In this document: positions 3,901 to 61,285 of the stretch, piece after piece
Position numbering within the stretch: the stretch's first letter is position 1
Layout: each line of letters begins with the position of its first letter
IMG/VR virus record: IMGVR_UViG_3300034073_005389
Coordinates: 297,491-361,490 of that record
DNA: 64,000 nt
Direction: 5' to 3' (one strand)
Translations under genes and position numbers: made by a program
Notes under the pieces: model-generated
The model's database searches: none
Told to the model about the DNA's origin: nothing
The model's input: the letters and a program-made list of their open reading frames with translations, nothing else

Positions 3901-4239
3901 TCACTTCATATGAACGCGAACTACTCCGCCACCGTGACCACGAACCACAGTAAACTGAGTTCCAAGAGAAGTTTGAGCCTTAATATAGCTATGAACCTGC
4001 TTGCTAATTGCTGGGAACAAAGCTGGATCTTTAGAGATTGCAGTAGATACAGTGTAAACCAGCATAGTAGTTGGGATAGCAGAAGCACTATTATCAAATA
4101 CTGCGTGCATAGCGCGCTCAATATCTGTAGCTGGAACCTCATTTCGTGAAACCCAATCAGTTAGTGCCTTAGTATAAGCGGCAACTGAAGCGTTTACGTC
4201 AACTGAACCATCAACACCATGAACTGTGAACTTATCCAT
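3901..4239 (-). CDS. Winged-helix-like protein, paralog of 49469-49801 and 50578-50925
   Basis: DGSVD..A N-terminus and FTVVRGHGGGV wing-like C-terminus shared with paralogs. Confidence 0.6.
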   Translation of the reverse strand: MDKFTVHGVDGSVDVNASVAAYTKALTDWVSRNEVPATDIERAMHAVFDNSASAIPTTMLVYTVSTAISKDPALFPAISKQVHSYIKAQTSLGTQFTVVRGHGGGVVRVHMK

Positions 4240-4315: not shown

Positions 4316-4648
4316 TCAATCTTCTGATACTGATTCAGAATTTGGGGCTACTTGAACCTCTACCTTTTTAGTGGGCTTCTTACTAGCATTTGGATCAGGC
4401 TTAAGAATACCACCATGAGCGCCACGCCTAACTAGTACACCAGGATATGACTCTAGCAAAAATCGAATTGTTGGATATAGTTGAGGACCAGTCATTCCGA
4501 ATTCTGCACCTAACTCAGCGGCAAGGGCAGTTGCAGGGATTTTATCTCCTGGATTTAGAGCTTCAATTCTCTCAGATGCCTTAACAAAAATTTCACGAAT
4601 CTTATTTAGAGAAGCCTCTACATGATCTACATTATGCATTTTATTCAC
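4316..4648 (-). CDS. Putative winged-helix DNA-binding protein
   Basis: PGDKIPATALAAELG helix and VRRGAHGGI Rrf2/GntR-like wing. Confidence 0.55.
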   Translation of the reverse strand: MNKMHNVDHVEASLNKIREIFVKASERIEALNPGDKIPATALAAELGAEFGMTGPQLYPTIRFLLESYPGVLVRRGAHGGILKPDPNASKKPTKKVEVQVAPNSESVSED

Positions 4649-4751
4649 TCCAATTTACTTTGTTACTAACTTGGTACAGGGTACCGCCTCTACTTATAAA
4701 AACCTAGGTTGCCCGATGGGCAACCCATATAATTACTTTATCTACAATAAC

Positions 4752-45253: not shown

Positions 45254-45337
45254 TGCTCAAAGTGGGACTCGAACCCACACGGTTATTATAACCCGCAGAT
45301 TTTAAGTCTGCTGCGTATGCCATTCCGCCATTTGAGC
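45254..45337 (-). tRNA. tRNA-Leu(TAA)
   Basis: GCAGA-CT-TAA-AA-TCTGC; closely related to the 38067 copy. Confidence 0.93.
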
Positions 45338-45424
45338 AATATACCCACTTTTATACCATAAGGGATTAGTGGGAACACCTGCCGTTTTTTATCTAGGAGG
45401 ATAACGGTCAACCTAAATCTCTAC

Positions 45425-45865
45425 TCAATAATCATCATACGATGAGTACCGACTCTCCATATAATCGTAATACGATTCCATCTCATTGTGATGCTCATAT
45501 GGGCGCGCAAGTCGAACACCCAACACATTCAACATCTCCTCAATCACATTCATGCGAATGAGTGGTTCATTTTTCTTCTCATCTACTTCTTTATAGAAGT
45601 TCTCAATAGCCTCTTCTCGAAGCTCTGCAATCTCATCCTTAGAAAGATTAGGATTCTTCTCCAAAGCCGCGTATTCTGCCTCATACGCAATCTCATCTGC
45701 CAAATCGCCCAACATATCATGTTCTTCATCAGCAGGACAAATATAATCCGTACTACGATCCAAACGATTCCATTCATCAACCAACTTACTAATCATCTCA
45801 AGCTTGATACGCGATTGCATGCTTTCGTCATTGAGAGAATCATCCAAAATCACATAGCTTCGCAT
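45425..45865 (-). CDS. Acidic hypothetical protein, paralog of 54281-54739
   Basis: RPYEH.NE.E.Y..YME C-terminal motif. Confidence 0.7.
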   Translation of the reverse strand: MRSYVILDDSLNDESMQSRIKLEMISKLVDEWNRLDRSTDYICPADEEHDMLGDLADEIAYEAEYAALEKNPNLSKDEIAELREEAIENFYKEVDEKKNEPLIRMNVIEEMLNVLGVRLARPYEHHNEMESYYDYMESRYSSYDDY

Positions 45866-45899
45866 ATATATACCTCTGTGTGAATGTTTGTTTACAGTA

Positions 45900-45985
45900 T
45901 GGTGCCGCCAACAGGACTTGAACCTGTATGCTCAATGAGCAAAAGATTTTGAATCTTCCGTGTATGCCGATTCCACCATGGCGGC
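45900..45985 (-). tRNA. tRNA-Leu(CAA), CCA encoded
   Basis: GAAGA-TT-CAA-AA-TCTTT; body resembles Leu-TAA at 31398. Confidence 0.92.
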
Positions 45986-46166
45986 TTATTTAGGGTAAGT
46001 AACAACCTACCCTTCACTTCTAATGAATTAGGTTAACCGATGGGAAACCCTGTTCATAACAATAGGCAGTTTAGACACATGCCCAGGTGTATCTTACTAT
46101 AATCACCATGCTACCAAATGTCAACTCTCAAGTATTTTATAAATATATAGGCTGTCAATGGCAAGA

Positions 46167-46400
46167 TTAGATTTCCACCATTGCCAAACGCACATTGGTA
46201 AACGTATACGGAACACCATCCGGCGTCTTATCAGGAAGATAGGAAAGCAGCTTCCTAGCCGCTTCATCCCTATTAGGAGAAGTACGAATACACTCAAGCA
46301 TCAGTCGATACAAGGGTTCATCATTACCCAGCCAAAGACACACATTCCAAGCGTTGTAGTTCTTATGCCCGTTATACTTCTTAGACATTTGTGCCTCCAC
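46167..46400 (-). CDS. Conserved hypothetical phage protein
   Basis: YNG..NY..WNV.LW..NDE.LY, TPDG. Confidence 0.75.
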   Translation of the reverse strand: MEAQMSKKYNGHKNYNAWNVCLWLGNDEPLYRLMLECIRTSPNRDEAARKLLSYLPDKTPDGVPYTFTNVRLAMVEI

Positions 46401-46413
46401 TAGACTTGAGTAG

Positions 46414-46734
46414 TTAGACCCACATTCCTTCGTGGAAAGGAACTACATTTCCATCCTTTTTCCGAAAAAACCATTTGAACTTTCGCTGAAAAAGATCTCC
46501 ACGAGAACCAATAGCCTGATTGATTCTCCTCTTGGTGGTTACACCCCTATAGTTGTTTGTAAGCAACTGAACATCCCCGTTCTTATTCCAAGTCACCACT
46601 GGAGTATTATGGTAAAACAAACCAATGGCATCAGCGGTAATACGAGCAACCCTCGTTGCCTTCTTACCACGAACATTCTTGCTATTCTTGCCATTCAAGA
46701 ACTGTTCCGCCGAAACATAGCTACAAGGAATCAT
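46414..46734 (-). CDS. Hypothetical basic protein
   Basis: TTKRRIN motif. Confidence 0.65.
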   Translation of the reverse strand: MIPCSYVSAEQFLNGKNSKNVRGKKATRVARITADAIGLFYHNTPVVTWNKNGDVQLLTNNYRGVTTKRRINQAIGSRGDLFQRKFKWFFRKKDGNVVPFHEGMWV

Positions 46735-47087
46735 AAATACCTCTTCAACTATTAGAGTAATAGGTTACAATAACTGCTTGATATTCACCAGCAGTATTTA
46801 CCACAACTCCAAGTACCGCTCCCATTCCTCCAGGAAAAGAACTTCTCTCATAAGCAATAACATGCTTACGACCATGCATATAAGCATCTTCAGCAGAAGA
46901 AAATAGTTCTGGCAAAACCACAGGTTCTCTAGGAAACGGATTATGAAAACTATAAAAGGGAAGCCCATTAGAATAATGACCCTTTGGATTTAGGTCTAAA
47001 ACCTGAATGTTCATTGTAAACCTCTTATAAGAAAACTTCTTGATTATAAGATTAGGTATTTCAGAATAAGCCCCTGGCTACTTCCAC

Positions 47088-47150
47088 TACAGAAGCGCGG
47101 AATCGAACCGCACGCAGTTTCTAGTTTCGTGCACAAAACTATACTTCTGC
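47088..47150 (-). ncRNA. Reduced tRNA-like RNA (acceptor + T arm + one hairpin)
   Basis: GCAGAAG/CTTCTGT, TGCGG-TTCGATT-CCGCG, TAGTTTTG-TGCA-CGAAACTA. Confidence 0.5.
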
Positions 47151-49067
47151 TTATTCAGATAAGTTAGCTACTCTTACCTTGAAATACCTAATCTTATAAA
47201 CAAAAATATTAGGCAGTTTATACACATGCCCAGGTGTCAACATGATTGACTCCTTCATTCCAGAAACTATTTTACCACTTATACAAACACATAACAAAAA
47301 CAATACCACCCGAAACAAACCAAGAGCCAACCATAACCAAAAACCCAGTTTGTGCCGACATACTAACCTCTATAGTTATGTGATTTGTTGAATACAAAAA
47401 GGCAGTTTATACACATACCCAGGTGTATAAACTACGCTCAGTCTTCGATCCCGCCTTTGCGGAAGGCTTGGAAGACTTTACCAATGAAATAAGCGGGGAT
47501 GCAGATGAGCTTGGGGGGATTATGCGCCTCGGGTCCGGCGAGAACCAAGATTTCGTATTCGTCAGTCTCCGTGTTGTATCCAACAAGAACGTCATCGTTC
47601 AGAACGAGTTTGTTTTTCATGTGCTATCCTTTCAGAGTGAACTTTGAACCGCCATGTTTAGAGCAACAGAACAATCCATTCAGGAGTAACTTTGCACTAG
47701 ACACTTTGCCGCATTACGAATGATCCTCATCACAGCCTCCTTGTAGAATCACACACATTTGTGTATTATAATAAACCAACAAGCCGAGAGACTAAATAAA
47801 AATATGTCTCTCTTTCTTGCTGCAACAAGCAAACGATTATAGCTTATCTACTTGCAGGTAAATAAACCTTATCGTTTCTTTATAATCACTTGTTGGCTTA
47901 TTGTAATACACAAGGCAGTTTATACACTTGCCTAGGTGTTTGGGTTATTTGGTAAAAATAAGTGGGGCATTTGGTAAAAATAGGATTTGCACCTATTTCT
48001 CCCTATCCAGGGCGAGTTAGCTATACTCCTTTACCACTATCCCCGGTCCTATTAGATTGATAGGTAATCTCACTAATAGGTATTAGGTAGTTTAGACACT
48101 TGCCTAGGTGTGTATGGCTATTCTCTGAAAGGCTCCCAGGTTACTATCCTCGGTCCTATTAGATTGACTAAGAGGTAATAAAAATGGCAACCATCCAAAC
48201 ATCTTTATCCACGGTTGCCATCACCGGATAAAGAAATAGCAACCATCTCAACATACTTTACCCACGGTTGCCATCACCGAGTAAAGCTGGAACGGTTTCA
48301 GGTAAATCCGCCAACCAAAACTATTAGGCAGTTTATCCACTTGCCCAGGTGTATTCCTCACGGCAAGAAATACCTTCCATCCACCGCATCAACCTTATCC
48401 AGCATATCCAGAATCTTGTTCTTCTCCTCGCCTTCCGACAATCCTCGAACCACCAACATCAGATTGTCCCAGGCATCCTGATCAATGCCGTATTCATCAT
48501 CCAAAAGAGACTCAATGAAGTTGAACATTGTGCTTACCTCCAATCCAACCCAACCTTGTCCCCTACCTACAATCTCCCAAGTTTACCGATGGGAACCCCC
48601 ACTTATTGCCAACAAAGCCGAAACCTTGTTGGCAATCCTGTCAATCCTCTACCCGCTCCAAATAACTCTCCTCCTCATTAGAGGTTTTTTTGTAACCCGT
48701 AGCCACCACAATCTCTCCCGAACTGTCCTCCGAGAATACCGCATCAGGACAAACTTGCAACACCAGTTGCACCATTTCCGCAAAAGTGATCTTCATCACC
48801 ACCCAACCTTGTCAGGAGATACCACCAAACAAAAATACGGATTCCCAGGTTTCATCAATCGCAACTTGTTTCCCAGCTTTCCCATAAAACAATACACGCC
48901 AGCATAACCAGAAACACTTGCATACACCAAATCACCAATCCGCAAGTTCATTATGCCTCCTGTTTTATCTCCAACCAACCGCTCCCCCCACCTCTAATCA
49001 CCCAAGTTGACCGATGGGAGCCGTTTGCACTTACCAGGAAGCCCATTACAGGCTTCCCAGTAAATAA

Positions 49068-49394
49068 TCACTTTTGAAGCGCCTTCTTTTCCATATTCTC
49101 CGTGGCAACTTCCACCAGTTGCCGAACATACTTATACATCATCACTCTGGCTTTATTCAAATGATTTCCCGTCAACTTCTTACCACTCATTAGCCATTTG
49201 GCATAATAAGTGCCAAGCCTGGCATCAGGTCCATTGAAGCCTTTGCCATTCGTGTGCAATGTGGTATTGCTGGTTTGCTCATCCATGGTTTGACGAGCAA
49301 AAATAGCCAATACCGCCCTCTCCACCGCATAATCATTGCAAAGCAACAAATAACGAATGTAATCCGGACTATTCTTTTCCATCTTTTCCTCCAA
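49068..49394 (-). CDS. Conserved hypothetical phage protein
   Basis: RQT.DEQ...T.H.NG.GF...DA, KY..QL. Confidence 0.75.
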   Translation of the reverse strand: MEEKMEKNSPDYIRYLLLCNDYAVERAVLAIFARQTMDEQTSNTTLHTNGKGFNGPDARLGTYYAKWLMSGKKLTGNHLNKARVMMYKYVRQLVEVATENMEKKALQK

Positions 49395-49413
49395 AAAAAG
49401 ATTTTCAAGAACT

Positions 49414-49459
49414 TGGACGGAGGGAAAGGAATCGAACCTTTCCTACAACCATTCTCCGT
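49414..49459 (-). ncRNA. tRNA-minihelix-like element ending in CCA
   Basis: CGGAG-AATGGTTGTA-GGAAAGG-TTCGATT-CCTTTCC-CTCCG-T-CCA, intergenic. Confidence 0.5.
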
Positions 49460-49468
49460 ATTCTCTAA

Positions 49469-49801
49469 CTACTTGCGCGAAATACCACCATTCTGCCCAC
49501 GACTCGCCACAAACTTATTGCTCCCAGCAAGATAATCAGCAATCCGCTTGCTCAATCGACCATAATCCTCATACCGATTGCTAATCTTAGCAAACACCTG
49601 CCCAATCAGCAATGGCTTCACCACCTTTGCGTTATTGTTCTCATCAAAAATACTATTCAAAGCATTCTCAATCAGAATATCCTCCGAAAGATTGACATTC
49701 TCCCATTCCACCAAATCCCCCATAAACTTATTCAGCGTAGCCTCATGATCAATCGCACCCGCGTCATTACGAATAACATAGGAAACAAAATCAATCTTCA
49801 T
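49469..49801 (-). CDS. Winged-helix-like protein (AT-rich copy)
   Basis: SYVIRNDAGAIDHEATL.KFM.DL...IADYL...RGQNGG. Confidence 0.65.
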   Translation of the reverse strand: MKIDFVSYVIRNDAGAIDHEATLNKFMGDLVEWENVNLSEDILIENALNSIFDENNNAKVVKPLLIGQVFAKISNRYEDYGRLSKRIADYLAGSNKFVASRGQNGGISRK

Positions 49802-49869
49802 AATCTTTTTTTCCTTTCAGCAACCAACCATTCCCCCCACCTCTAATCACTCAGGTTGACCGATGGGCT

Positions 49870-50300
49870 AACCCATACATACTTATCTGCCTATTTACCC
49901 ATTCACACATACATACATTTTTTCTGCCCGCTTACGCACACCCGTATACCCACCAACCATAAACATACTCTCCCATTCATACACACCCCTACTTACACTC
50001 CCCCAATAACCTATAAACTATAATAAATACATTCCACCCAAACTAACTACCCAATATCTCAATACCTACACCCCCACACACATCTATATGCAAAATTTAT
50101 TCTACCTATACCTTATACAATACCACTATTCCTTATTTCCATAACTTACATTTCTCCCGCCCCCATTCTTTATTTCCCTAAATCTGCACCCCATTTCTTT
50201 CTTATTTCTACTTATTTATAAAATAGATTATGTAGTTTAGTGTATATGTGTATTGATGTGTCTATGTTTGTGTGCAGTATAATAAATAAAAAAAGTTTGT
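49870..50300. other. Non-coding strand-skewed boundary segment
   Basis: About 350 nt nearly G-free (C/A/T) on +, flipping to C-poor G/T-rich at about 50225; no ORFs. Confidence 0.7.
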
Positions 50301-50451
50301 TTTTGGCTAGGGCAAAAACCATTGTGTGCAGTTGTTTGAATCTATGCCTAAATGTGTTTTGCGCCCTAGCCAAAAAGCATTTTTTTTAGGGCTAGGGCTT
50401 ATGCCACACCCAATTGCCAACCGAATGCATTTATCCAAAAACACAAACACA

Positions 50452-50557
50452 AAAAAAAAAGCCAATGGCGGGATTTCCGCCATTGGCTTTCACACACGCA
50501 AAAAAAGACAAAAAAAAAGACAAAAAAAAAGCCCCAGCGCATTGGCGCTGGGGCTTT
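50452..50557 (-). terminator. Two tandem intrinsic terminators closing the GC-rich cassette region
   Basis: GCCAATGGCGG..CCGCCATTGGC and GCCCCAGCGC..GCGCTGGGGC, each preceded on + by long A runs. Confidence 0.8.
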
Positions 50558-50577
50558 GGGAGACGGTCAGTCAGGTT

Positions 50578-50925
50578 TCACCGAGCGATGCGCTCGACTC
50601 CGCCATTCTGACCACGCTGGGCGTGGAATCGCGTCTTGTCTCCCAAGTAATCCGCGATCTTCTTAGAGAATTCCCCGAACTGAGTGAACGAAACACCCTT
50701 TCCGAGAAGGTACTGGAACGCTTCGCCCACCACCAGGGGCTTGGGCATGCGTTTGTTATCGTGACGGTCAAAGACCGAGTTGACGGCTTCGCGGATGAGT
50801 TCGAACTCATCCGCCGAAGCGGACTCGAAAGCGATGAGGTCTTGCATGAACTTGTGGAGCGTTTGCTCGTGATCGATGGAACCATCATCCGAGCGAACCA
50901 CGTAGCTAGCGAGATTGATCTCCAT
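50578..50925 (-). CDS. Winged-helix-like protein (GC-rich copy)
   Basis: SYVVRSDDGSIDHEQTL.KFM.DL...IADYL...RGQNGG; GGAGG RBS. Confidence 0.7.
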   Translation of the reverse strand: MEINLASYVVRSDDGSIDHEQTLHKFMQDLIAFESASADEFELIREAVNSVFDRHDNKRMPKPLVVGEAFQYLLGKGVSFTQFGEFSKKIADYLGDKTRFHAQRGQNGGVERIAR

Positions 50926-51222
50926 GACTGTATCCTCCGAAGGGCGTTGCGGCGTGATTGCCTGCCCTCAATATTGGTTCTGCAGGTTGACCGATGGGTG
51001 CAACCGGGACAAAAAAACCTTTACTCAGGGGCATGTTGACCGATGGGTACAATCCATCTAAAAAACCAAAACCCCCGTTGAATAGCAGAGGTTGACCGAT
51101 GGGCGCTTTGACGCGCAGGTACATTGTAGATTAGAGGTTGACCGATGGGAACCCGATTGCACTTGGCAAAAAAAAATCCCAGGTGCCTAAGCACCTGGGA
51201 TAAGATAAGACTCACTTTAGTA

Positions 51223-51396
51223 CTAGCTGGTTCGCACCTGGTAACCCACCGCCTTCTCCAGGCTCTTGTCGGTTTGGCTCAGGTTCAGCTTGAGCGCTTC
51301 CTTACGAGCCGTAAGCAAACACTCGTACACCTTCACCACCGACTCAGACAAGGAGTTGCTTTCCAGGTCCAGCTGCAGACGAACGATCTTGTACAT
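51223..51396 (-). CDS. Cassette hypothetical protein
   Basis: AGGAGG RBS, start MYKIV. Confidence 0.6.
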   Translation of the reverse strand: MYKIVRLQLDLESNSLSESVVKVYECLLTARKEALKLNLSQTDKSLEKAVGYQVRTS

Positions 51397-51518
51397 AGAG
51401 CCTCCTATCAGGAATGACCCTGACACAGTAGTATTGCCTGGTTGACCGATGGGTGCGATCCATTAAAACTTGCTCAGGTACAGATGTACCTGAGCAAGTT
51501 AGGCTAAGCTACTACCTG

Positions 51519-52079
51519 TCAGCCGTGAGAGAAGCTGACCTTGGTGGGTCGGGTTGCCATCAGCTTGAAGTCGCTGGTGAACGTACGCTCCTTCATCACA
51601 GGTCCAGAACGCTTACCCATCACCCTGGCGATTGCCTCGTCACGGTCCACTTCCATCGTGATGTGATTAGTGGAGCCGTCTTTGTTGGTGATCTTGGAGT
51701 CAATCACCCCTCGACAACCTGGCGGTCCAGCATCTAGCTTGCGATCCACCCACCTGGACGCTTCCCCACTCATGTAGAAACCCATCTCCTCCAACACTCC
51801 ACCCTTCGCATCGTAGATGCAGGCGTTGATGGGCTTCTGCACCTTCTCACGCTGGCGTGTAGCCTTGGCTTCCTGCTTCTTCTCAGGAACCCTGAGAAGG
51901 TCTTGCAAGACCGCCTCTTGCACCAGCTTGAGCGCTGGCGTCGGATACAGCTCTCCCTTCTCCAGGCGAGCCAGAATCGAGACAGCCTCGGGAATCCCCG
52001 AAAGGAACTCCCTTTGAGCCTGCAAGAAAGCGGCAGCGGAAACCTTACCAGCGGACTGACGCAGGAACTTCTTGTGCAT
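51519..52079 (-). CDS. Cassette hypothetical protein
   Basis: GGAGG RBS, start MHKKF. Confidence 0.7.
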   Translation of the reverse strand: MHKKFLRQSAGKVSAAAFLQAQREFLSGIPEAVSILARLEKGELYPTPALKLVQEAVLQDLLRVPEKKQEAKATRQREKVQKPINACIYDAKGGVLEEMGFYMSGEASRWVDRKLDAGPPGCRGVIDSKITNKDGSTNHITMEVDRDEAIARVMGKRSGPVMKERTFTSDFKLMATRPTKVSFSHG

Positions 52080-52189
52080 AGGAACCTCCAAACAAAGCCG
52101 TGATTGGCTCACCTATGTTTGTGCAAGTTGACCGATGGGTTCAAGCCACTGAAAACGCTCTTGAGACCATGTGGTCTCAAGAGCCTAGA

Positions 52190-52399
52190 CTAGAAGCTCA
52201 AAGGCGATCCATCCTCGTGTTCAGACTCCTCCGGCAACATGTCAATGAATGGGGCTGCCGTCTCCCAATCATCCTCACAGGCACCTCCCCTGAGGTTGAG
52301 CGTGTGAATACGCTCAAAATCAGGAATATAGCTGTCCATCTCATCTTCCAACATGGGGACGGATCGAGGAACGTATTGCTTTCCCATAACTACCTCCAT
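52190..52399 (-). CDS. Cassette acidic hypothetical protein
   Basis: Between motif 52432 and 3' hairpin. Confidence 0.55.
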   Translation of the reverse strand: MEVVMGKQYVPRSVPMLEDEMDSYIPDFERIHTLNLRGGACEDDWETAAPFIDMLPEESEHEDGSPLSF

Positions 52400-52528
52400 G
52401 AACCATGATTGGTTCACAATAGGTTTAGCAAGTTGACCGATGGGCTACCTGGATTGCACTCAACAAAAAAAAACGCCCTAGTACTCGTGTGTGAGTACTA
52501 GAGCGTTTAGGTGTGTGAGACTGTTTAG

Positions 52529-53110
52529 TTACACGCCGAGAGCAGCAAGCCGCTCATCGATGTTATTGATGCGTTCTTGTTCCCACGCTTCCGCACCAGG
52601 ATCATCTTGGTTGTGAGCGTGTAGCAGTGCTTCCACTGCCACTCGACGCTGAGCAATCAAGTTGTCAATCTCTCGCTGCCTGGGATTGGGCATACCTTTG
52701 ACGTAGCCCTGCAAGGTAGCTTGAGCGGTTGGTGCTGGAGACTTGCCGTATCGCTCTTGTTGGATCAAGTACCTGGCTCGTTGCCTGGCACGATCCAACT
52801 GCAAGCTGTACAGCTCACCAGTGTATGCGCCCGTGAACTTCTCAATGGCTCTGATGATTTCTTTCTTTGTCTCCGCTTCGGACTTTTCCTTGTTTGCCAG
52901 ATTGCACTCATGGATGAACGTTTTAGCGTCCTCCAAGGTTGCAACCTTGGTCGGCATGGGCGGAGGCGTTTGAGCAGGCTTGACAGGCTTGCTTACCACC
53001 TTTCGCTCCTCGGGAATGGTCCGGATTTGGATTGTCTGACGCTTCTCTTGCAACTTGGCAAGAGACGCAGCATACAACGCAATCATTTCGCGGAGATCGA
53101 CTTTGTTCAT
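52529..53110 (-). CDS. Cassette hypothetical protein
   Basis: GGAG RBS, start MNKVD. Confidence 0.7.
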   Translation of the reverse strand: MNKVDLREMIALYAASLAKLQEKRQTIQIRTIPEERKVVSKPVKPAQTPPPMPTKVATLEDAKTFIHECNLANKEKSEAETKKEIIRAIEKFTGAYTGELYSLQLDRARQRARYLIQQERYGKSPAPTAQATLQGYVKGMPNPRQREIDNLIAQRRVAVEALLHAHNQDDPGAEAWEQERINNIDERLAALGV

Positions 53111-53231
53111 GTTTACTCCAATCCACTGACAAGTGCCAGTAGACACCTATGGTTGTGCTGGTTGACCGATGGGTGTGAGCCGCTGAAACAAAATGCTCAG
53201 GTCTATATAGACCTGAGCACCTGTCAACTCG

Positions 53232-53480
53232 TCACCTCTCGTCAGTGAGAACCATCACGAACTCCTTGTCAAGCAAGATCTTGAGCGCATCATCCTGTTC
53301 GGATGGATGCAGCTGTACTTCCAAGGGGAAGAATCGGCTCCAATCATAGGCTCGAACCCGGTATTCTTCCGGCTCACCTGCACAGTCCCAAGTAGGACCT
53401 TTGGCTGGAACATAGTCCAGCTCCAGGTCTACGGTAATGGTTTTGTGGTTGCGTACGATCTGCATCTGAATGTCTTTCAT
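53232..53480 (-). CDS. Cassette hypothetical protein
   Basis: AGGAGG RBS. Confidence 0.65.
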   Translation of the reverse strand: MKDIQMQIVRNHKTITVDLELDYVPAKGPTWDCAGEPEEYRVRAYDWSRFFPLEVQLHPSEQDDALKILLDKEFVMVLTDER

Positions 53481-53574
53481 AAAACCTCCTGGGTCAATGG
53501 TGGTGTAGTAAGTTGACCGATGGGTGCATACAACTGAAAACGCTCATGGAACCATATGGATCCATGAGCATAAA

Positions 53575-53820
53575 CTAGATGATGTTGAGCCTGCTCCAAA
53601 ACCTTTGGCTTTCTTTCCCTACCTCACACAGAGGCAAAGGAGCGACTTCATTTTGAGCAAGCATGCGCCTGACTTTACGCCCTTCCTGGTCCTCCTTGAA
53701 ACCAGGAAGGCAAATAAAGTCTCTGGAAACGGCTTCAGAGAATGCGTCCTCCAACGCAATCTCGAACTGTTTCTCAGACTCGAACTTATAGCCACTGATA
53801 GTGTAAATGCACTGTGCCAT
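53575..53820 (-). CDS. Cassette hypothetical protein
   Basis: GGAGG RBS, start MAQCI. Confidence 0.6.
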   Translation of the reverse strand: MAQCIYTISGYKFESEKQFEIALEDAFSEAVSRDFICLPGFKEDQEGRKVRRMLAQNEVAPLPLCEVGKESQRFWSRLNII

Positions 53821-53939
53821 AAATAGCACCTCCGTAACCTACTTACTGCTTGTTGACCGATGGGTTACCTGGATTGAACTTAACAAAAAAACCCAGGCTT
53901 ACATGGACTCATTAGAATCCACATAAACCTGGGCTCTCA

Positions 53940-54167
53940 CTACCTCACCAACACGAAGGTGTTGGGTTGACCCAGCCAGCTGTTGAGCTGGGTCGCCATC
54001 TGCCTTGCATCTTGGTATGTGTACTCTTGTACACGAGTTATGCCGTTGCGAGTGTCTCGCAACTTCCAACCTTTCTCCTCGAACAATGCCAGGAAACAAT
54101 CCTGGCAAATCGGCTTGCAGTTGAACTTGCATGTGCTTGCGCTTTTATCACACATCTGGCAGTTCAT
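53940..54167 (-). CDS. Cassette Zn-finger-like protein
   Basis: CQMC...CQDC. Confidence 0.6.
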   Translation of the reverse strand: MNCQMCDKSASTCKFNCKPICQDCFLALFEEKGWKLRDTRNGITRVQEYTYQDARQMATQLNSWLGQPNTFVLVR

Positions 54168-54280
54168 AATGCCTTTCCATCTACTCTGTTTGGTGAGTAG
54201 ACACCTATACCTATCTATGTTGACCGATGGGTGCACACAACTGAAACGTTGTGCAGGAGTTGCCTCCTGCACAACCTTTC

Positions 54281-54739
54281 TCAGTAGTCGTCGCGACCCG
54301 ACCACCGATCCTGTTCCATGTACTGCATGTACCTCTCCTCCTCGTTCCAGTGCTCGTAGGGTCGCATCATACGAGCGTTGTAGTCTCTGAGTACCGACTC
54401 CAGCGCCTCCCGCTTGGCGTGGAGCCTGTTGATGTAGGCGTCTCGCTGCGCCTCCATCTCTTCGTTCACCTGCTCTCGTAGGTGATCGCGCTCCTCCTTG
54501 GTCAAGTCGCGACCAAGAGCAGACTCACGACTACAGAACTCCTCATACGCACGCTCTTGGAAGAGGTCATCCTCCATCTCACGTGCGTGGTCGTCCCAGT
54601 GGTAACGCTCGATCTGAGCATTGGTATCATTCCACTGAGAGGCGAGACCCTTGATGATCTCCTCCTTTGCCTGAGCGATCAGGCGCTCGTGGTCCGTAGC
54701 GTTTTCGGGGCACTCGATGTTGATCACGTATCCACGCAT
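54281..54739 (-). CDS. Cassette acidic protein, paralog of 45425-45865
   Basis: RPYEHWNEEERYMQYME. Confidence 0.7.
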   Translation of the reverse strand: MRGYVINIECPENATDHERLIAQAKEEIIKGLASQWNDTNAQIERYHWDDHAREMEDDLFQERAYEEFCSRESALGRDLTKEERDHLREQVNEEMEAQRDAYINRLHAKREALESVLRDYNARMMRPYEHWNEEERYMQYMEQDRWSGRDDY

Positions 54740-54867
54740 ATCAGCCTCCAGACAAGCCTTGATTGGCTCACTTATGTTTTTGCATGTTGACCGATGGGTA
54801 CAGCCCACTGAAAAAAAACCGTGTCAGGAAATTCCTGACACGGCTAGGTATGTACGCTAGTTGGCGA

Positions 54868-55074
54868 TCACTTGACCTTGATCACCAGACCGTTTTGCAC
54901 GGTCACCTCTGCGTACCAGGTATGGGGCTGCGGGTAGTGCGGTCCACCTACCGCAGTAGTCCCATTCTCTGGCGGGTTGCCGAGACCAGGTGCGTAAATA
55001 TGCACCGGTTTCCCGGCAGCCACATCATCCTTGAGTTGCTTCTTGGTCTTGTAGTTCTTGGTGGTGTAGAACAC
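54868..55074 (-). CDS. Cassette conserved small phage protein
   Basis: KTKKQLK...GPHYPQPHTWYA. Confidence 0.75.
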   Translation of the reverse strand: MFYTTKNYKTKKQLKDDVAAGKPVHIYAPGLGNPPENGTTAVGGPHYPQPHTWYAEVTVQNGLVIKVK

Positions 55075-55202
55075 TGAACCCTCCTAGACAAAGCCGTGAT
55101 TGGCTCAATGGTAGTTGTGCAGGTTGACCGATGGGTACGGACCACTGAAACATGCTTGGAAGCATTCGCTTCCAAGCACGTTTTGTTGAGAGTGTTGTTA
55201 GA

Positions 55203-56827
55203 TTACTTCTTGTTGCTCTCCTTGTAGAGTACGATCAGCTGTTCGTATACCTGGCTGTGATGGTACAATCCTTCCTGCCATTCCAGCAGGAGTTTTTTCA
55301 CCCTTTCCTGCTGAATCTCGTTGAGAGCGTTGTACAGGTACAGACCTGGCAGTTCCCCATCCCACAGCTGGGTGAGAAGCCTCTCCTCTTCCATGACCAG
55401 AGCCTTGATCTTCTGGTCGTACGCCAACTGCTTGCGCAGCTTGGCGATACGGTTTTTGATCTGGTGTACGGTGTTGCGGTTGCGGTTGCTCATGTGAGAC
55501 TCCGAGAAAGCCGTGTGTGGAGTTGTACGGCTCACATACAGTTATGCGGGTTGACCGATGGGTTAACTTGTTTGCATTTAACAAAAAAAACCCTTGGCTT
55601 GCTTGCGCAAACCAAGGGCTTTATCACTGCAACGAAAGCAAGAACATCTCTCCTTTCTGAGTGAAAGACTTGAGAATCATACCGCCAGCCATGGAGTAAA
55701 CTCCAAGGTCTGTGCCAGGATGAACTTTGCTGTTGAACTTTGCCACACGATCTCCATTGGGAGCCATGTAGGCAATGGTCAGCCCTTGCTCCAGGGCTTT
55801 CTCGAACTCAACGTGGCTAATCTGCATAGCTACCTCCTCGTATTGAAGTATGTATATTGACCGATGGGTGCAAACAACTAAAACTGCAAGCACCTGATTG
55901 CTCAGGTGCTTGCAAGAGTCAGTACATGCTGATGCTGTTCTCAATCTCTTGGTCTTGGCTCAACCGAGCCGCCTCCTTCCAGCGGCGCTGAACCATCCAA
56001 CGGGTGACCAGCCCGTTGTACTTGAATGCTTTTTCGCACGCTTCTACGGTTTTCCGCCATGCCTCTGCCGCCTTTTGGTTACCGGTGGCGGCAGCGAACT
56101 GCCCCTCCACCGAAGCCAGGATGGAGAGAGAGATGAAAGGCGTGCTGGATCGCATGATCTTCATGTTTATCTCCTAGAGCCATTGGTTGATTGGCTCACT
56201 TGTAGTTGTGCAGGTTGACCGATGGGTACATACCACTAAAACTGCAAGTACCTGATTGCTCAGGTACTTGCGTGTTTCATGAGTTCACGTATTCCTCCTC
56301 TGCCTTATTGATGATGCGGTGCGCCAAGTTGTCAATCTCATCCATCTCTGCCTCGGTGGCTTGGTCGAGCGCACCCGCAGACACAAGCTCCATCACCTTC
56401 AGATGAAGGTTGCCGATGTTATGGCAACCATTCACGTAGTTGTATTCTCCTCGGATCTTTCCGAAATGGTTCTTGTTACAAGCAAACCCGTTGTTACGGA
56501 GATGCTTGATGACCAGGGGGATCAGCCTACCCAGTTGCATAACTTGCCTTTCCGAGCCATAGTGGCTCACTTATGTTTTTGGAAGTTGACCGATGGGTAC
56601 AACCAACTGAAACATGCTCAGGATTGCTCCTAAGCATGCTTGTCTCAGAGAGATAGGCGAGATACCACCCTGCACCCCTGACGAACCAACGAGGCAAACA
56701 TGCGCTCCCAGTTGTCCTCAGAGACGAGCATGGTTGCCTCGTCTCCTTCTTTGGTAATGTACCACAGGCGTACATTACATTTTTCTTTGATCCCAGGGCT
56801 AACTGCCCTGGGTTTTAGCTTACTCAC
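55203..56827 (-). other. Five single-gene cassettes with small hypothetical proteins
   Basis: 55203-55493, 55624-55827, 55919-56164, 56277-56540, 56645-56827; each between a motif copy and a 3' hairpin. Confidence 0.6.
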
Positions 56828-57039: not shown

Positions 57040-57900
57040 TCAACCGAGCGCCAGCTTCGCCAGGGCGATTGCGCCCTCCCGACTGCGGGCGCCGCCGATG
57101 AACCGTGCGTTGTGGCAGAATACGGAATCATGAACTCCAGTCACTGCCGCCAGCTGTTCGTTTCGTAGCCCCGCCCATGCCTCGGGGAGCGGTCGGCGTT
57201 GCCCGAAGCTCCCCATGCTGGGCGGAACGCACTGGACCAGCCAGTCGTCCGCTTGGGGGAACACGAGGAAGAGCGCGTGGGTGCTCTCCTCCACCACCGT
57301 CTGCATGACCGGCATGAACCGGTCCAGAACGATGATCTTCCCCTCGATTGCGTTGGAGATGGCGTGGCGAGCGCCCTCCAACGCGAGCATCCGACCCTGC
57401 GCAGAGGCGATCACCCTGCGCAGGTGTGCCTCTGCAAACTCGACGGCGCGGGCGAATGCGTCGTCGAAGTTTTGCGCCTCGTGCCAGCAGGGGTTGAACC
57501 CGCTGACCACATCAGAGAAGGTGTGGTGATCCACACCTTCAGTAATGCTGCGGGTGCCGTACCCGCAGTCGAGGGCGTCAACCGCCCAGATGAGGTCGCT
57601 TTCGACCTCCCCCTCCACGCCGGGGGCGATGGAAGCACCAAAGTGCTTCCACACGAGACCGGCGCTGCTGTAGGGCACCCCATTGGGGCGCACGCCAGCG
57701 CCCCCCTTCTGGTGGTGGTCGAATCGTAGCGTGGTGGGGTCATAGACCCCTCCCACGTCCACAACAACCATCCCCATCTCGATCACCTTGGGATCGCGGG
57801 TCCGGATAACCGGACCCTCGAACCCCGCCATGCGCAAAATAGCGCAGGCGAGAACGTCGTCGGCGTGGAAGGGACCATTGTGAGTGACAATACTGCTCAT
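57040..57900 (-). CDS. MYG1/UPF0160-family DHH exonuclease
   Basis: THNGPFHADD, RTRD, DVGGVYD, FDHHQ, SSAGLVW, FCH. Confidence 0.9.
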   Translation of the reverse strand: MSSIVTHNGPFHADDVLACAILRMAGFEGPVIRTRDPKVIEMGMVVVDVGGVYDPTTLRFDHHQKGGAGVRPNGVPYSSAGLVWKHFGASIAPGVEGEVESDLIWAVDALDCGYGTRSITEGVDHHTFSDVVSGFNPCWHEAQNFDDAFARAVEFAEAHLRRVIASAQGRMLALEGARHAISNAIEGKIIVLDRFMPVMQTVVEESTHALFLVFPQADDWLVQCVPPSMGSFGQRRPLPEAWAGLRNEQLAAVTGVHDSVFCHNARFIGGARSREGAIALAKLALG

Positions 57901-58506: not shown

Positions 58507-58680
58507 TGCAACCTCCTTGCAGAGTCTATCCACTACCCGTAATAGATCAGCATGACCTGTCATCAGGTAACAGCTTCGACTCTCACATACAGTTGTGCAA
58601 GTTGACCGATGGGTACAAGCCATGTAGAATCAGTGAGCCGGAATCCCGAAGGACTCAACAGCTCACTGATTCCGGGACAC

Positions 58681-58911
58681 CTACAGATCGTAGACGCCCC
58701 GTTGTCCCACGATTGACCAAGAGGAGTACTCCTCTTGGTCAATCATGGTTGTGTGTCCGACGATGAGGTTTTCAAACCTCTCGTCGGTCACCAGTTTGTA
58801 GGCGTCGCCACGTAGCAACGCCTTTGCCGCCCGCATGGCGAGCGGCAGAGGGAGACCCGTCTTTCGACGGATCTCCCTCCCCAAAACCACACGTCTTCGT
58901 TTCAGTGTCAT
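58681..58911 (-). CDS. Cassette basic hypothetical protein
   Basis: GGAGG RBS, start MTLKRRR. Confidence 0.6.
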   Translation of the reverse strand: MTLKRRRVVLGREIRRKTGLPLPLAMRAAKALLRGDAYKLVTDERFENLIVGHTTMIDQEEYSSWSIVGQRGVYDL

Positions 58912-59059
58912 TTGACACCTCCACTTACTTGTTTGCAAGTTGACCGATGGGTGCGTGCCAGTTAGATTGACCAGCCGGAATCCCGAAGGACTCAACAGCT
59001 GGTCAATACTACCCCCTCACTGAAGCTCAACCCTCTCAGGGAACTTCAGTGAGGGACCT

Positions 59060-59407
59060 TCACACCTCACACCAGGGAATAGTCTCCCTGGTGAAATCCT
59101 CCTCCACCTCATGCCAGCCGAACTGGTCGGCATGAGGTGAAACCCTCCCCACGTAGCGGACCAAACGAAATGGTCCGCTGTGGGGGTAGTCCGTATCGTA
59201 CGCGGCGGACTCTTCGTCCACCTCGTACGCCACCACCCACGCCATTCCGGCGTGGAAGCCACGCGCCCACGGGGGCGCGTCGTCGCCCCGAAGAGCCCAG
59301 AGCCCTTCGGGGTGGGTATAGAGGAGGTCACGGACCTCCTCCATGGTGGGGATGGGGAGGTCCGTCTCCGGAACCTCCCCATCCCAATCAGGAAACATCA
59401 CCCTCAT
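59060..59407 (-). CDS. Cassette acidic hypothetical protein
   Basis: AGGAGG RBS, start MRVMF. Confidence 0.65.
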   Translation of the reverse strand: MRVMFPDWDGEVPETDLPIPTMEEVRDLLYTHPEGLWALRGDDAPPWARGFHAGMAWVVAYEVDEESAAYDTDYPHSGPFRLVRYVGRVSPHADQFGWHEVEEDFTRETIPWCEV

Positions 59408-59575
59408 GGTGACCTCCTTGTAGAGTCTATCCACTACCCGCAACAGATCACCACGATCTATTATCAGGCAGTAGCTTCGACCCTCACATACAGTTATGCA
59501 AGTTGACCGATGGGTGCACGCCAGTTAGATTGACCAGCCGGAATCCCGAAGGACTCAACAGCTGGTCAATCTCAC

Positions 59576-59797
59576 TCACTGCGGGAGGAAGCTCCGAAGA
59601 GCCTCCATCGCCACAGCGAGGGTTGCGCCCCCGCCCGTGCGGTCCCACGCCCCTCGGGCGTGGTTCTCCGCTGCTGGCACGTAGGTGACGTGCCAGCAGC
59701 GCCCGCAGGCGCACCCATCCGGGGAAGGTGGCGTGATCTCCACCTTCCCCGGACCCCAGGCGGCACAAGCCGCCTGTACCAGAGATTCGAAGTCCAT
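59576..59797 (-). CDS. Cassette hypothetical protein
   Basis: AGGAGG RBS, start MDFES. Confidence 0.6.
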   Translation of the reverse strand: MDFESLVQAACAAWGPGKVEITPPSPDGCACGRCWHVTYVPAAENHARGAWDRTGGGATLAVAMEALRSFLPQ

Positions 59798-59972
59798 GTG
59801 GACCTCCTCAGAGAGCGTATCCACTACCCGCAATAGATCACCACGATCTATCATCAGATAGAGGTTTCCACCCTCACATGCAGTTATGCAGGTTGACCGA
59901 TGGGTGCGAGCAGTGTAGAAACTCGGCAAGCCGGAATCCCTTACGGGACTCAACAGCTTGCCGAGGGGGGAG

Positions 59973-60185
59973 TCAATGAAGCTTGAAAAGCTTCATTGCC
60001 TCCCCCGCTGTCATTTTTTGCGGGAAGTCGTATTCATATACGACCCCCGCTACGTCGTACGTGAGTCCGAGGTACACAAGTACCTCGGACTCTGGGGGGA
60101 GGACTGCCAGCCTCTGGCAGTCCTCCCCGTGCAAATATGGATAGCCCCATAAATCGGGGCTCATCCACTCGTAGAATTCCTCCAT
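59973..60185 (-). CDS. Cassette protein, paralog of 61286-61489
   Basis: M.EFYE...LP..SEV.VY.G..Y...G.VY....P..MTA.EA.K.F. Confidence 0.7.
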   Translation of the reverse strand: MEEFYEWMSPDLWGYPYLHGEDCQRLAVLPPESEVLVYLGLTYDVAGVVYEYDFPQKMTAGEAMKLFKLH

Positions 60186-60447
60186 GGAATTCTCCTTAGA
60201 GAGCGTATCCACTACCCGCAATAGATCACCATAATCCATTATCAGGTAACAGCTTCAACTCTCACATACAGTTACGCAGGTTGACCGATGGGTGCAAGCC
60301 ATGTATATTAACAAAAAAATTGAAATACTCATATACTCTTGTGTGAAAAGAAATAAGTAACTTATACAAGTTGACCGATGGGTGCAAGCCGTGTAGAGTA
60401 ACGAGCCGGAATCCTTTGCAGGACTCAACGACTCGTCACTCGCATTG

Positions 60448-61110
60448 TTACTTGCGATTTTTCTTGCCACCAAAGTGGCTCAGAAAACTCGCAATCGCAC
60501 CCGCCGATGCGGGCTCACCTCGCACCGGAGGCGGAGGGGGAGGAGGAGGGGGAGGAGGAGGAGGGGGAGGGTATTCTGAATAATACCTCTCCTTATAATA
60601 CTCCTCCTTCAATCCCCCTGCACTCATGACAAAGCGCGAATACGCGATTTTGTCATGAAAGTTCTCCCAAGAGACCGACCAATCAGCCTCAATTGGGAGA
60701 ACCAGCCACTCTTTGCTGCGGTTTCCATACCGGGACGTGCTCAAATCCCGGTGAAGTTTACACCCCCGGAACACCGGGTCCCCCAGGGTGTAGCGTTTCC
60801 CCCCTTGGGGGATTGCCCTGACCGTGACGCATTGCGCCACGATCAGATCGTCGGCAGCCTTTTCAGCTGCCTTGCGTGCGGCTTCTTCAGCCGCTTTGGC
60901 TGCTTGCGCAGCCTCCCGCGCAGCTGCCTGCGCCGCCCGCTCCGCCCGCTCCTCCGCCAGACGAGCCTCTACCTGGGCGGCAAATGCCGGGTCCAGGTAG
61001 CTCCTTCCCGCCGCCCCGATAGGCGGCGGAGCCGCTTGCCCCCACGGATCGTAGGAGCCGCGCTGCGTGCCGGGCTCCTCCCCGTTGAGATAACGGTTCC
61101 AGTCACCCAT
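60448..61110 (-). CDS. Cassette protein with Ala/Glu/Lys helix and poly-Pro tract
   Basis: GGAGG RBS; AAEEAARKAAEK; run of about 14 Pro. Confidence 0.7.
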   Translation of the reverse strand: MGDWNRYLNGEEPGTQRGSYDPWGQAAPPPIGAAGRSYLDPAFAAQVEARLAEERAERAAQAAAREAAQAAKAAEEAARKAAEKAADDLIVAQCVTVRAIPQGGKRYTLGDPVFRGCKLHRDLSTSRYGNRSKEWLVLPIEADWSVSWENFHDKIAYSRFVMSAGGLKEEYYKERYYSEYPPPPPPPPPPPPPPPVRGEPASAGAIASFLSHFGGKKNRK

Positions 61111-61285
61111 AGGTGACCTCCTTGTAGAGTCTATCCACTACCCGCAATAGATCACCATGATCTATTATCAGGTAGAGGCTTCCACTCTCACATGCAGTTA
61201 TGCAGGTTGACCGATGGGTGCGAGCAGTGTAGAAACTCGACAAGCCGGAATCCCTTGCGAGACTCAACGGCTTGCCGAGCGACGG

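What the first reader, a model, noticed from the sequence alone, without database searches (positions are those of the whole stretch)
49469..51149. Winged-helix paralog pair straddling the GC boundary, with four motif copies stacked upstream: candidate cognate regulator
Seen: 50578-50925 and 49469-49801 encode clearly homologous proteins, one in GC-rich and one in AT-rich codons, on either side of the non-coding boundary. A third homolog is at 3901-4239, next to another wing-bearing protein (4316-4648) that follows a palindromic motif copy. Only the 50578 gene has four motifs (50986, 51035, 51091, 51137) within ~165 bp upstream. The RGxxGG C-terminus resembles the Rrf2-type wing. Inference: an autoregulated motif-binding factor relaying expression from the early to the later region.
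Basis: partly seen in the sequence, partly recalled or inferred. Interest (0 to 1): 0.72.

Follow-up and report, generated by a model that had tools for sequence, protein, structure and literature searches.

The report
New phage winged-helix family; promoter link unproven
Two (in fact at least three to five) small paralogous proteins of an uncultivated 361-kb phage fold as winged helices and form a new, unnamed phage family, but the repeated DNA motif stacked in front of one of them is the phage's general promoter core, and nothing found here shows that these proteins read it.

Summary
Genes A (50578-50925) and B (49469-49801) are 46% identical paralogs on either side of a 776-bp non-coding GC boundary. 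C (3901-4239) is a weaker homolog, and four exact motif copies lie within 164 bp upstream of A. The winged-helix guess also holds: AlphaFold2 with a 78-sequence alignment gives pLDDT 95, and every fold match over residues ~35-110 is a winged-helix domain. The family has about 97 clusters at 50% identity, all metagenomic. It has no Pfam, PHROG, PDB-sequence or GenBank-phage match and is not Rrf2.

The "cognate regulator" inference is not supported. CCCATCGGTCAAC occurs 50 times in the window, always on the coding strand. It stands before nearly every early gene, often 25-30 nt after a terminator, so it is a general promoter core. Only the copy nearest A carries the usual downstream element; the other three are bare 13-mers. 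Relatives carry variants of CCCATCG. One relative has the family behind canonical TTGACA-N17-TATATT promoters with no CCCATCG, and another lies in 12.6 kb without it. The four-copy stack is not seen upstream of the family gene in the five other lineages where that region could be read. What binds the motif, and what the proteins bind, remains open.

The parts
50578..50925 (-). Gene A: 115-aa family member in GC-rich codons (GC3 70%). It is the last gene of the GC-rich early block.
   Evidence: A GGAGGA ribosome-binding site lies 7 nt before the ATG.
49469..49801 (-). Gene B: 110-aa paralog and first gene after the boundary. Its coding strand is C-poor.
   Evidence: AlphaFold2 model with pLDDT 95 shows a winged helix.
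3901..4239 (-). Gene C: 112-aa distant paralog. It belongs to a C-type subfamily, 44-47% identical to the member in L151.
4316..4648 (-). Gene D: 110-aa protein with the same RGxxGG wing. It is a remote winged-helix relative and lacks the family's N-terminal module.
50986..50998 (-). Motif copy nearest A. It is the only one of the four with the usual downstream element, so it is the complete promoter of A.
   Evidence: Downstream position-weight score 15.5, against a median of 15.2 for the other copies.
51035..51047 (-). Bare 13-mer with no downstream element, followed by a T-run.
   Evidence: score -11.8, like random sequence.
51091..51103 (-). Bare 13-mer, followed by a weak hairpin and a T-run.
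   Evidence: score -7.9.
51137..51149 (-). Bare 13-mer, lying about 27 nt after the terminator of the upstream gene.
   Evidence: score -13.4.
51176..51201 (-). Intrinsic terminator of the preceding gene, immediately upstream of the four-copy stack.
50457..50557 (-). Two strong intrinsic terminators directly after A (50528-50557 and 50457-50491). They end the early block.
   Evidence: Their position is conserved in L010.
49802..50577 (-). 776-bp ORF-free boundary between A and B. It is G/T/A-rich and C-poor on the coding strand.
50389..50420 (-). 32-nt element that is unique in the 361-kb genome and 100% conserved in L010, while the rest of the gap has diverged.
49855..49867 (-). Complete promoter motif of B (13-mer plus TTAGAGGTGGGGGG).
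4708..4720 (-). Motif variant CCCATCGGGCAAC before the D-C pair. With the preceding GTTG it forms a 7+3+7 inverted repeat.
   Evidence: The same variant occurs at 947-959.

Best explanation
A, B and C are paralogs of an unnamed family of 110-135-aa proteins found so far only in uncultivated phages.

Shown:
- Each protein has an acidic N-terminal module (a short beta-hairpin and a long helix) and a basic C-terminal winged helix. The wing carries the invariant (K/R)-G-x-x-G-G...R turn.
- The 13-mer CCCATCGGTCAAC is separate from these genes. It is the conserved core of this phage lineage's early and middle promoters.
- The core sits on the coding strand before nearly every gene of the last 64 kb of a genome that is coded entirely on one strand. 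It commonly lies 25-30 nt after a terminator.
- It is normally followed 8-9 nt later by TAtAAGTGAG.
- Gene A has one such complete promoter plus three bare 13-mers upstream.

Inferred:
- The proteins bind nucleic acid through the wing and act early in infection.
- The A-type copy is kept as the last gene of the GC-richer early block, before a long non-coding boundary.
- The bare 13-mers act as extra docking sites for whatever reads the core, which would raise expression of A.

A specific protein-motif pairing is not needed to explain the layout and is, on balance, disfavoured.
For: Homology.

Family: 97 representatives at E<1e-3, all 100-160 aa but one, with invariant G102, G105 and G106.

Fold: pLDDT 95, pTM 0.77, topology H-beta-H-H-beta-hairpin. 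All fold hits over residues ~35-110 are winged-helix domains, with Z 6.5-8.8. The best viral match is an uncharacterised protein of an uncultured phage, TM 0.76, E 5e-7.

Charge: N-terminal half -4.9, C-terminal half +4.7, wing +3.2.

Motif as promoter:
- 50 copies, all on the minus strand, against 0.02 expected.
- No exact copy elsewhere in the 361-kb genome.
- Terminators lie just upstream of at least 12 copies.
- The downstream element is conserved.

Lineage-wide core: CCCATCG variants on the coding strand in L010, L012, L014-16, L149 and L150.

Only one of A's four copies is complete.

Position: the family gene is followed by a 280-776-bp gap, and GC falls in or beyond that gap, in this phage, L010, L012, L014-16 and L150.
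Against: No binding data of any kind exist. No transcription start has been mapped, because no RNA run was listed.

The RNA polymerase or factor that reads the core was not identified. A role for the family in reading it therefore cannot be excluded.

Three of the five clearly bare 13-mers sit in front of A. That could mean something specific to this gene.

Winged-helix matches are at fold level only, at Z values where common arrangements also score.
Confidence: 0.6

Rival explanations
1. One reading: A-type (and B-type) proteins bind the 13-mer itself. One version is a shut-off repressor or relay factor, made from the last early gene. It would occupy the perfect 13-mers of the early block, spare or activate the imperfect copies of the later region, and be buffered by the three bare copies at its own gene.
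For: - The fold is a winged helix with a basic wing.
- 33 of 34 copies in the GC-rich block are exact, but only 4 of 16 in the later region are. The later copies have a stronger downstream element instead.
- Three of the five clearly bare 13-mers lie before A.
- Family and CCCATCG-type motifs occur together in 5 of 7 lineages examined.
- L012 has two motif copies before its second paralog.
Against: - The motif fronts about 30 genes transcribed before A, so something else must read it first.
- L147 has the family, with all its conserved residues, behind canonical TTGACA-N17-TATATT promoters and no CCCATCG. L151 has none in 12.6 kb.
- The stack is not conserved in the other lineages.
- Helix 3 is near neutral and poorly conserved. 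Its ERIADY-like core is shared by phages whose motifs differ in the variable half.
- Co-occurrence is confounded by shared ancestry.
Confidence: 0.17
2. The family acts at the boundary rather than at promoters. The A-type protein would bind the non-coding region that follows its gene, for example the unique conserved 32-nt element. It might control the passage from the first-entering early block to the rest of the genome, loosely like the small DNA-binding pre-early protein A2 that phage T5 needs for second-step DNA transfer. The T5 comparison comes from general knowledge and was not tested.
For: - The A-type gene is the last gene before a long ORF-free gap, and GC drops in or beyond that gap, in several lineages.
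- The 32-nt element is unique in the genome and 100% conserved in L010 while its flanks diverge.
- The whole genome is coded in one direction from this end.
Against: The 32-nt element was not found in L012, L014-16 or L150. B, C and D lie elsewhere. Genome ends and entry polarity are unknown, and the record may be incomplete at this end.
Confidence: 0.1
3. The winged helix is a protein-binding module rather than a DNA-binding one. It might dock on host RNA polymerase, like the HARE-HTH N-domain of the Gram-positive delta subunit, or on another host protein. The acidic N-terminal module would be the effector part.
For: RNA polymerase delta / HARE-HTH domains and cullin WHB domains, which bind proteins, are among the best fold matches. 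The most conserved residues lie in the N-terminal module rather than in helix 3. Overall pI is near neutral, median 6.6.
Against: The wing is strongly and conservatively basic (+3.2; K/R at positions 101, 103 and 109 in 74-94% of members). That is typical of nucleic-acid contact. The fold matches do not discriminate between subtypes.
Confidence: 0.1

Closest known systems
Winged-helix (wHTH) domains in general (forkhead, linker histone H1/H5, cullin WHB, TFIIIC eWH, HARE-HTH of RNA polymerase delta)
   Same: The C-terminal ~75 residues have the H1-beta-H2-H3-beta-hairpin topology. They superpose on these domains at Z 6.5-8.8 and TM about 0.5.
   Different: There is no detectable sequence relationship to any of them. 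The family adds a conserved acidic N-terminal beta-hairpin and long helix, and it ends exactly at the wing.
Rrf2-family regulators (IscR, NsrR, CymR; Pfam PF02082)
   Same: The wing carries an R-G-x-x-G-G turn. An Rrf2-type structure (3k69) is among the fold matches at Z 7.1 and has the highest identity of the winged-helix hits, 18%.
   Different: No PF02082 match for A-D or for any of 78 members. In Rrf2 proteins the wHTH is N-terminal and followed by a long dimerisation helix; here it is C-terminal with nothing after it. A and B have no cysteines.
T4 MotA (activator of middle promoters, reading a box that replaces the -35 element)
   Same: As an analogy only: a small phage early protein with an acidic N-terminal part and a basic DNA-binding C-terminal part, in a phage whose promoters carry a non-host upstream box.
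   Different: MotA's DNA-binding domain is a 'double wing', not a winged helix (general knowledge). There was no sequence or fold match to MotA. Ribosome-binding sites as close as +29 to +35 from the motif start rule out a -35/-10 geometry here.
Phage-RNA-polymerase promoter arrays (T7-like: near-identical promoters before each transcription unit)
   Same: The motif is a near-invariant core repeated before each gene on one strand, with terminator-promoter punctuation. The start site is forced to lie at or just after the conserved block. The L149 variant ends in GGGAGA, like the T7 initial transcript (the T7 comparison is from general knowledge).
   Different: No single-subunit or multisubunit RNA polymerase gene was detected in the 361-kb record. 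The single-subunit search had a silent control. The core is shorter than a T7-like promoter and has a separate downstream element.

Membership tests
Winged-helix fold | Topology H1-beta1-H2-H3-beta2-wing-beta3 in a confident model | tested here: met
   AlphaFold2 with the 78-sequence alignment gives pLDDT 95: helix to residue 54, beta 60, H62-73, H77-93, hairpin 97-100/106-109. All top structural matches are winged-helix domains.
Winged-helix fold | Sequence-specific DNA binding through helix 3 and/or the wing | not testable with these tools
   The protein-DNA complex job was not folded. The only indirect evidence is a basic wing (+3.2) and a near-neutral, poorly conserved helix 3.
Rrf2 family (PF02082) | Match to the family profile | tested here: not met
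   No Pfam hit at E<=1 for A, B, C or D. None of the 78 family members matches it at E<=0.1.
Rrf2 family (PF02082) | N-terminal wHTH followed by a C-terminal dimerisation helix, often with Cys ligands for an Fe-S cluster | tested here: not met
   The winged helix is C-terminal and the protein ends at the wing. A and B contain no cysteine.
Rrf2 family (PF02082) | R-G-x-x-G-G turn in the wing | tested here: met
   G102, G105 and G106 are invariant, with K/R at 101 in 87% of 78 members. This is a shared local feature and does not establish membership.
Sigma-70-type bipartite promoter (for the motif) | A -35 box, a 16-18-nt spacer and a -10 box, with the start about 7 nt further on and upstream of the ribosome-binding site | tested here: not met
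   If CCCATC were the -35 box and TAAGTG the -10 box, the start would fall at about +35. However, ribosome-binding sites lie at +29 to +35 (copies 55856, 58939, 42301), and start codons at +31 to +33 in L150.
Phage-polymerase-type promoter array (for the motif) | A near-identical core before each transcription unit, on the coding strand only | tested here: met
   50 of 50 copies are on the minus strand. 33 of 34 in the early block are exact. Terminators lie 25-30 nt upstream of at least 12 copies.
Phage-polymerase-type promoter array (for the motif) | A phage-encoded RNA polymerase in the genome | tested here: inconclusive
   PF00940 gave no match, but its control genomes were silent too. PF04997 and PF00562 gave none. 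Giant ORFs have no PDB or Pfam polymerase match. One sigma-70 region 2 ORF lies at genome 28.3 kb.
   The family occurs without the motif in L147 (canonical TTGACA-N17-TATATT promoters) and in L151 (12.6 kb, none). The converse, motif without family, could not be tested because no complete relative genome was available.

The most novel reading that the evidence does not exclude
The A-type winged-helix protein is the factor, or a modulator of the factor, that reads the CCCATCG-type promoter core. That would define an unrecognised phage transcription-control system in a clade of uncultivated large phages. In this reading, the last early gene makes a protein that docks on the perfect 13-mers of the early block to shut them off or hand over to the imperfect later promoters, and the three bare 13-mers at its own gene act as an autoregulatory buffer.
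Probability: 0.15. Interest if true: 0.75.

Novelty: new variant of a known kind. Interest (0 to 1): 0.45.

Why it matters
The proteins define an unannotated phage family: about 100 clusters at 50% identity, with no Pfam or PHROG model and no cultured-phage member. The family now has a confident fold and a conserved position at the end of the early gene block, which makes a Pfam-style family definition and a simple binding test possible.

The surrounding system is of more general interest. It is a 361-kb genome coded on one strand, whose last 14 kb are 50-60% GC against 32% elsewhere. That region is punctuated by terminator plus near-identical promoter core before almost every small gene, and the CCCATCG core is shared by distant relatives of quite different base composition. 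It is an uncharacterised phage transcription programme with no identifiable polymerase or specificity factor.

If the family turned out to read that core, it would be a new transcription factor class. If not, it is one more early winged-helix protein of unknown target.

Tried and rejected
- **Single-sequence AlphaFold2 of A:** poor (pLDDT 53) and not used.
- **Protein-DNA complex prediction (A plus a 27-bp motif duplex):** not folded by the tool, so it is no evidence either way.
- **The search for related loci:** With B alone it found no relative in IMG/VR.
- **Scan of viral contigs for the 14-mer ACCCATCGGTCAAC:** gave only single, chance-like matches.
- **tblastn of B and P0047 against GenBank phages:** no match.
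- **blastn of the region against GenBank phages:** no match.
- **Literature search for the motif:** nothing.
- **RNA runs:** none was listed, so transcription starts could not be mapped.
- **Search for the polymerase or factor that reads the motif:** PF00940, PF04997 and PF00562 were negative. Pfam, PHROG and PDB searches of the giant ORFs were uninformative.
- **Weak PDB-sequence similarity of the family's N-terminus to MS2 coat protein:** E 5e-4 only for a tandem-dimer construct and 0.3 for the single chain. Treated as chance.
- **ESM Atlas feature search:** only scores below 0.9.
- **Motif as a sigma-70-type -35/-10 promoter:** rejected on geometry.
- **Motif as a purely RNA-level processing site:** considered less likely, because terminators sit directly upstream of many copies.
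- **GC-rich block as host flank of a provirus or an assembly chimera:** rejected. The motif, the strand bias and the paralogs run across the boundary, and independent contigs span it.

Full report
**Setting.** The window is the last 64 kb (297491-361490) of a 361,490-bp virus record that CheckV rates 97% complete. About 345 kb of the genome is near 32% GC, and the last 13-14 kb (window 50.3-64 kb) is 50-60% GC. Nearly all long ORFs of the whole genome lie on the minus strand, so transcription runs from the GC-rich end inward. Contigs from two other sequencing runs are 100% identical to window 45302-55579 and span the GC boundary. The junction is therefore not an assembly chimera. The phage occurs in subsurface and freshwater metagenomes.

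**Checking the observation.**
- A (50578-50925, 115 aa) and B (49469-49801, 110 aa) align end to end at 46% identity, E 1e-38.
- C (3901-4239) is a real but distant homolog: phmmer E 5e-6 to B and family-profile E 3.7e-31.
- D (4316-4648) has the same wing but aligns to the family profile only over the winged-helix part (hhalign 62% probability, E 7.5e-5).
- A further winged-helix-only relative lies at genome 290763-291191.
- A has GC3 of 70%. B has GC3 of 48% and is C-depleted on the coding strand (C 11%, G 31%).
- A and B are separated by a 776-bp ORF-free gap that starts with two strong terminators.
- Four exact motif copies lie at 50986, 51035, 51091 and 51137.

**The motif.** CCCATCGGTCAAC, allowing one mismatch, occurs 50 times in the window. 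All copies are on the minus strand, against 0.02 expected by chance. All 37 exact copies in the genome lie in this window. In the GC-rich block 33 of 34 copies are exact, roughly one per small gene. In the lower-GC part only 4 of 16 are exact.

Most copies are followed 8-9 nt later by TAtAAGTGAG(G/C), which is especially well conserved in the lower-GC part. Strong intrinsic terminators end 25-30 nt upstream of at least 12 copies. This is terminator-promoter punctuation, so I read the motif as the core of the phage's early and middle promoters.

It is not a sigma-70-type -35/-10 pair. Ribosome-binding sites lie as close as +29 to +35 from the motif start (copies 55856, 58939, 42301), and start codons lie at +31 to +33 in the relative L150. 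The transcription start must therefore sit at or just after the 13-mer.

I could not identify what reads it. No T7-like polymerase match was found, but that search's control genomes were silent too. No multisubunit polymerase match was found, and the giant ORFs gave nothing informative. One sigma-70 region 2 ORF lies far away at genome 28.3 kb.

**The four-copy stack.** I scored the 24 nt downstream of every copy with a leave-one-out weight matrix.
- Only the copy nearest A (50986) has the usual downstream element (15.5, against a median of 15.2).
- Copies 51035, 51091 and 51137 score like random sequence (-8 to -13).
- The only other clearly bare copies, 60370 and 61732, each lie 90-150 bp upstream of a complete promoter.

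A thus has one complete promoter preceded by three bare 13-mers. The cluster is the densest in the window. As a pure density event, though, it arises in about 19% of random placements of 34 copies in 13.7 kb.

**The protein family.** An exhaustive HMMER search with B found 97 representatives at E<1e-3, nearly all 100-160 aa. In a 78-sequence alignment, three glycines of the wing (G102, G105, G106 in B numbering) are invariant. K/R at positions 101, 103 and 109 is present in 74-94% of members. The N-terminal half is the best-conserved part (V10, R11, G15, D18, A21, T22, K25, F26, L30, I44, A47, V48, V51, F52, D53).

There is no Pfam match for any member and no PHROG match for A, C or D (B has only marginal ones, best E 0.003). 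There is no meaningful PDB-sequence match and no GenBank-phage match.

AlphaFold2 with the alignment gives pLDDT 95 and pTM 0.77. The model has a short beta-hairpin, a long helix to residue 54, then beta-H-H and a beta-hairpin wing. Foldseek against the PDB, an independent all-against-all structural search, AlphaFold DB clusters and the ESM Atlas all return winged-helix domains over residues ~35-110. These include cullin WHB, TFIIIC eWH, forkhead, linker histone, RNA polymerase delta / HARE-HTH, an Rrf2-type protein, MukF, Fur and IclR, at Z 6.5-8.8. The best full-length match is an uncharacterised protein of an uncultured phage (TM 0.76, E 5e-7).

The N-terminal half carries a mean charge of -4.9 and the C-terminal half +4.7, of which +3.2 is in the wing. 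Helix 3, the usual recognition helix, is near neutral and poorly conserved. The winged-helix fold is therefore well supported. Rrf2 membership is not: there is no profile match, the domain order differs, and there are no cysteines.

**Relatives.**
- **L010** (53% identity to B) reproduces the layout: a GC-rich copy ending ...ERIAR, terminators, about 650 bp of non-coding DNA, the motif, then a lower-GC copy followed by the same downstream gene.
- **More distant members** lie in one-directional arrays of small ORFs, each with its own variant of the core on the coding strand. L012 has CCCATCGTGCAA (12 copies). L014-16 has CCCATCG-NN-TAACGG (up to 31 copies). L149 has CCCATCGGGAGA (7 copies). L150 has CCCATCGGTCAAT (10 copies, plus single TGCAAT and ATCAAT variants).
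- **Position:** in this phage, L010, L012, L014-16 and L150 the family gene is followed by an unusually long gap (280-776 bp), and GC falls in or beyond that gap.
- **L147** carries a family member with all the conserved residues among 13 canonical TTGACA-N17-TATATT promoters and has no CCCATCG.
- **L151**, a C-type member, lies in 12.6 kb of 19-34% GC DNA with no copy.
- **The stack is not conserved.** L149 and L150 have a single copy before the family gene. L012 has one before its first copy and two before its second. L014-16 has one before the gene and three in the gap after it. L147 has none.

**Interpretation.** The layout is explained without a protein-motif pairing. The motif is the general promoter core, and A is the last and probably strongly expressed early gene. 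The family is a lineage-specific early winged-helix protein that most likely contacts nucleic acid through its basic wing.

Four points argue against the cognate-regulator idea:
- The motif fronts about 30 genes that are transcribed before A.
- The family exists where the motif does not.
- The stack is not conserved.
- Helix 3 is similar (ERIADY-like) in phages whose motifs differ in the variable half, while the conserved protein features are unchanged in the motif-less L147.

Three points keep it alive at about 15-20%:
- Three of the five clearly bare 13-mers are concentrated before A.
- The early block has perfect copies while the later region has imperfect ones.
- No alternative reader of the motif was identified.

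Two further readings each get about 10%. In one, the protein acts on the non-coding boundary, which contains a 32-nt element unique in the genome and 100% conserved in L010. In the other, the winged helix docks on a protein such as RNA polymerase.

**Limits.** No binding, expression or start-site data could be obtained. The protein-DNA complex job was not folded, and no RNA run was listed. All relatives are short metagenomic contigs, so the test "motif present, family absent" could not be run.

Noticed in passing
window 49415-49462 (-); also 47099-47109 (-); L010 about 1370-1425: Directly after the stop of B lies a tRNA-like minihelix: an acceptor-like stem ACGGAG/CTCCGT, a T-arm GGAAAGGTTCGATTCCTTTCC, then CCA. 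L010 has one at the same place with different stem letters (CAGAAT/ATTCTG), which looks compensatory. ARAGORN does not call either as a tRNA. It may be an RNA 3'-end processing signal.
   Followed up: partly
window 50389-50420 (-): A 32-nt element (TTGGCAATTGGGTGTGGCATAAGCCCTAGCCC) in the A-B gap is unique in the 361-kb genome. It is 100% conserved in L010 while the surrounding gap has diverged. It was not found in L012, L014-16 or L150.
   Followed up: partly
window 58531-61531 (-): leaders after motif copies 58601, 59502, 59892, 60280, 61206, 61584: Six promoters are followed by a shared leader of about 55 nt ending GATCTATTGCGGGTAGTG. This could be a repeated gene family, a structured 5' leader or a small RNA.
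   Followed up: no
window 58602, 58940, 59503, 60281, 60371, 61585, 63485 (+): Read on the opposite strand, the motif supplies TTGACC. In these copies it is followed after 17 nt by TAGAAT, TATATT, TAGATT or TAGAGT. These are good sigma-70-like sites pointing antisense to all the genes.
   Followed up: no
window about 26000-50000: The coding (minus) strand is strongly C-poor and G-rich here (GC skew -0.3 to -0.45 on the plus strand). This forms a third compositional zone between the GC-rich early block and the ordinary AT-rich genome.
   Followed up: no
window 630-824 (-) and 947-959 (-): A group I intron (Rfam, 52 bits) lies just downstream of a palindromic motif variant (GTTGCCCATCGGGCAAC). 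The same variant precedes the D-C gene pair.
   Followed up: no
whole genome G000; window 1-64000: Nearly all long ORFs of the 361-kb genome are on one strand, and the promoter core is confined to the last 64 kb. The window also holds 11 tRNA genes, including four tRNA-Leu(TAA), an RNA ligase, a radical SAM protein, a UvrD-like helicase, a spore-photoproduct-lyase-like protein and DUF2786/DUF7168.
   Followed up: partly
window 57040-57900 (-): A MYG1/UPF0160 exonuclease homolog (Pfam E 6e-76) sits in the most GC-rich part of the early block (58-62% GC), behind its own motif copy.
   Followed up: no
L014 10484, 10667, 10812; L014 6864-7121: In a distant relative, three motif copies stand in the ORF-free gap after the family gene. 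Four more lie within 260 bp before an unrelated 63-aa gene. Stacking of the core is therefore not peculiar to the family gene.
   Followed up: partly
L014 1695-2225 and L150 3132-3716: Two relatives encode a ribosomal protein L7/L12 homolog (PF00542) in the early block, a few kb upstream of the family gene.
   Followed up: no
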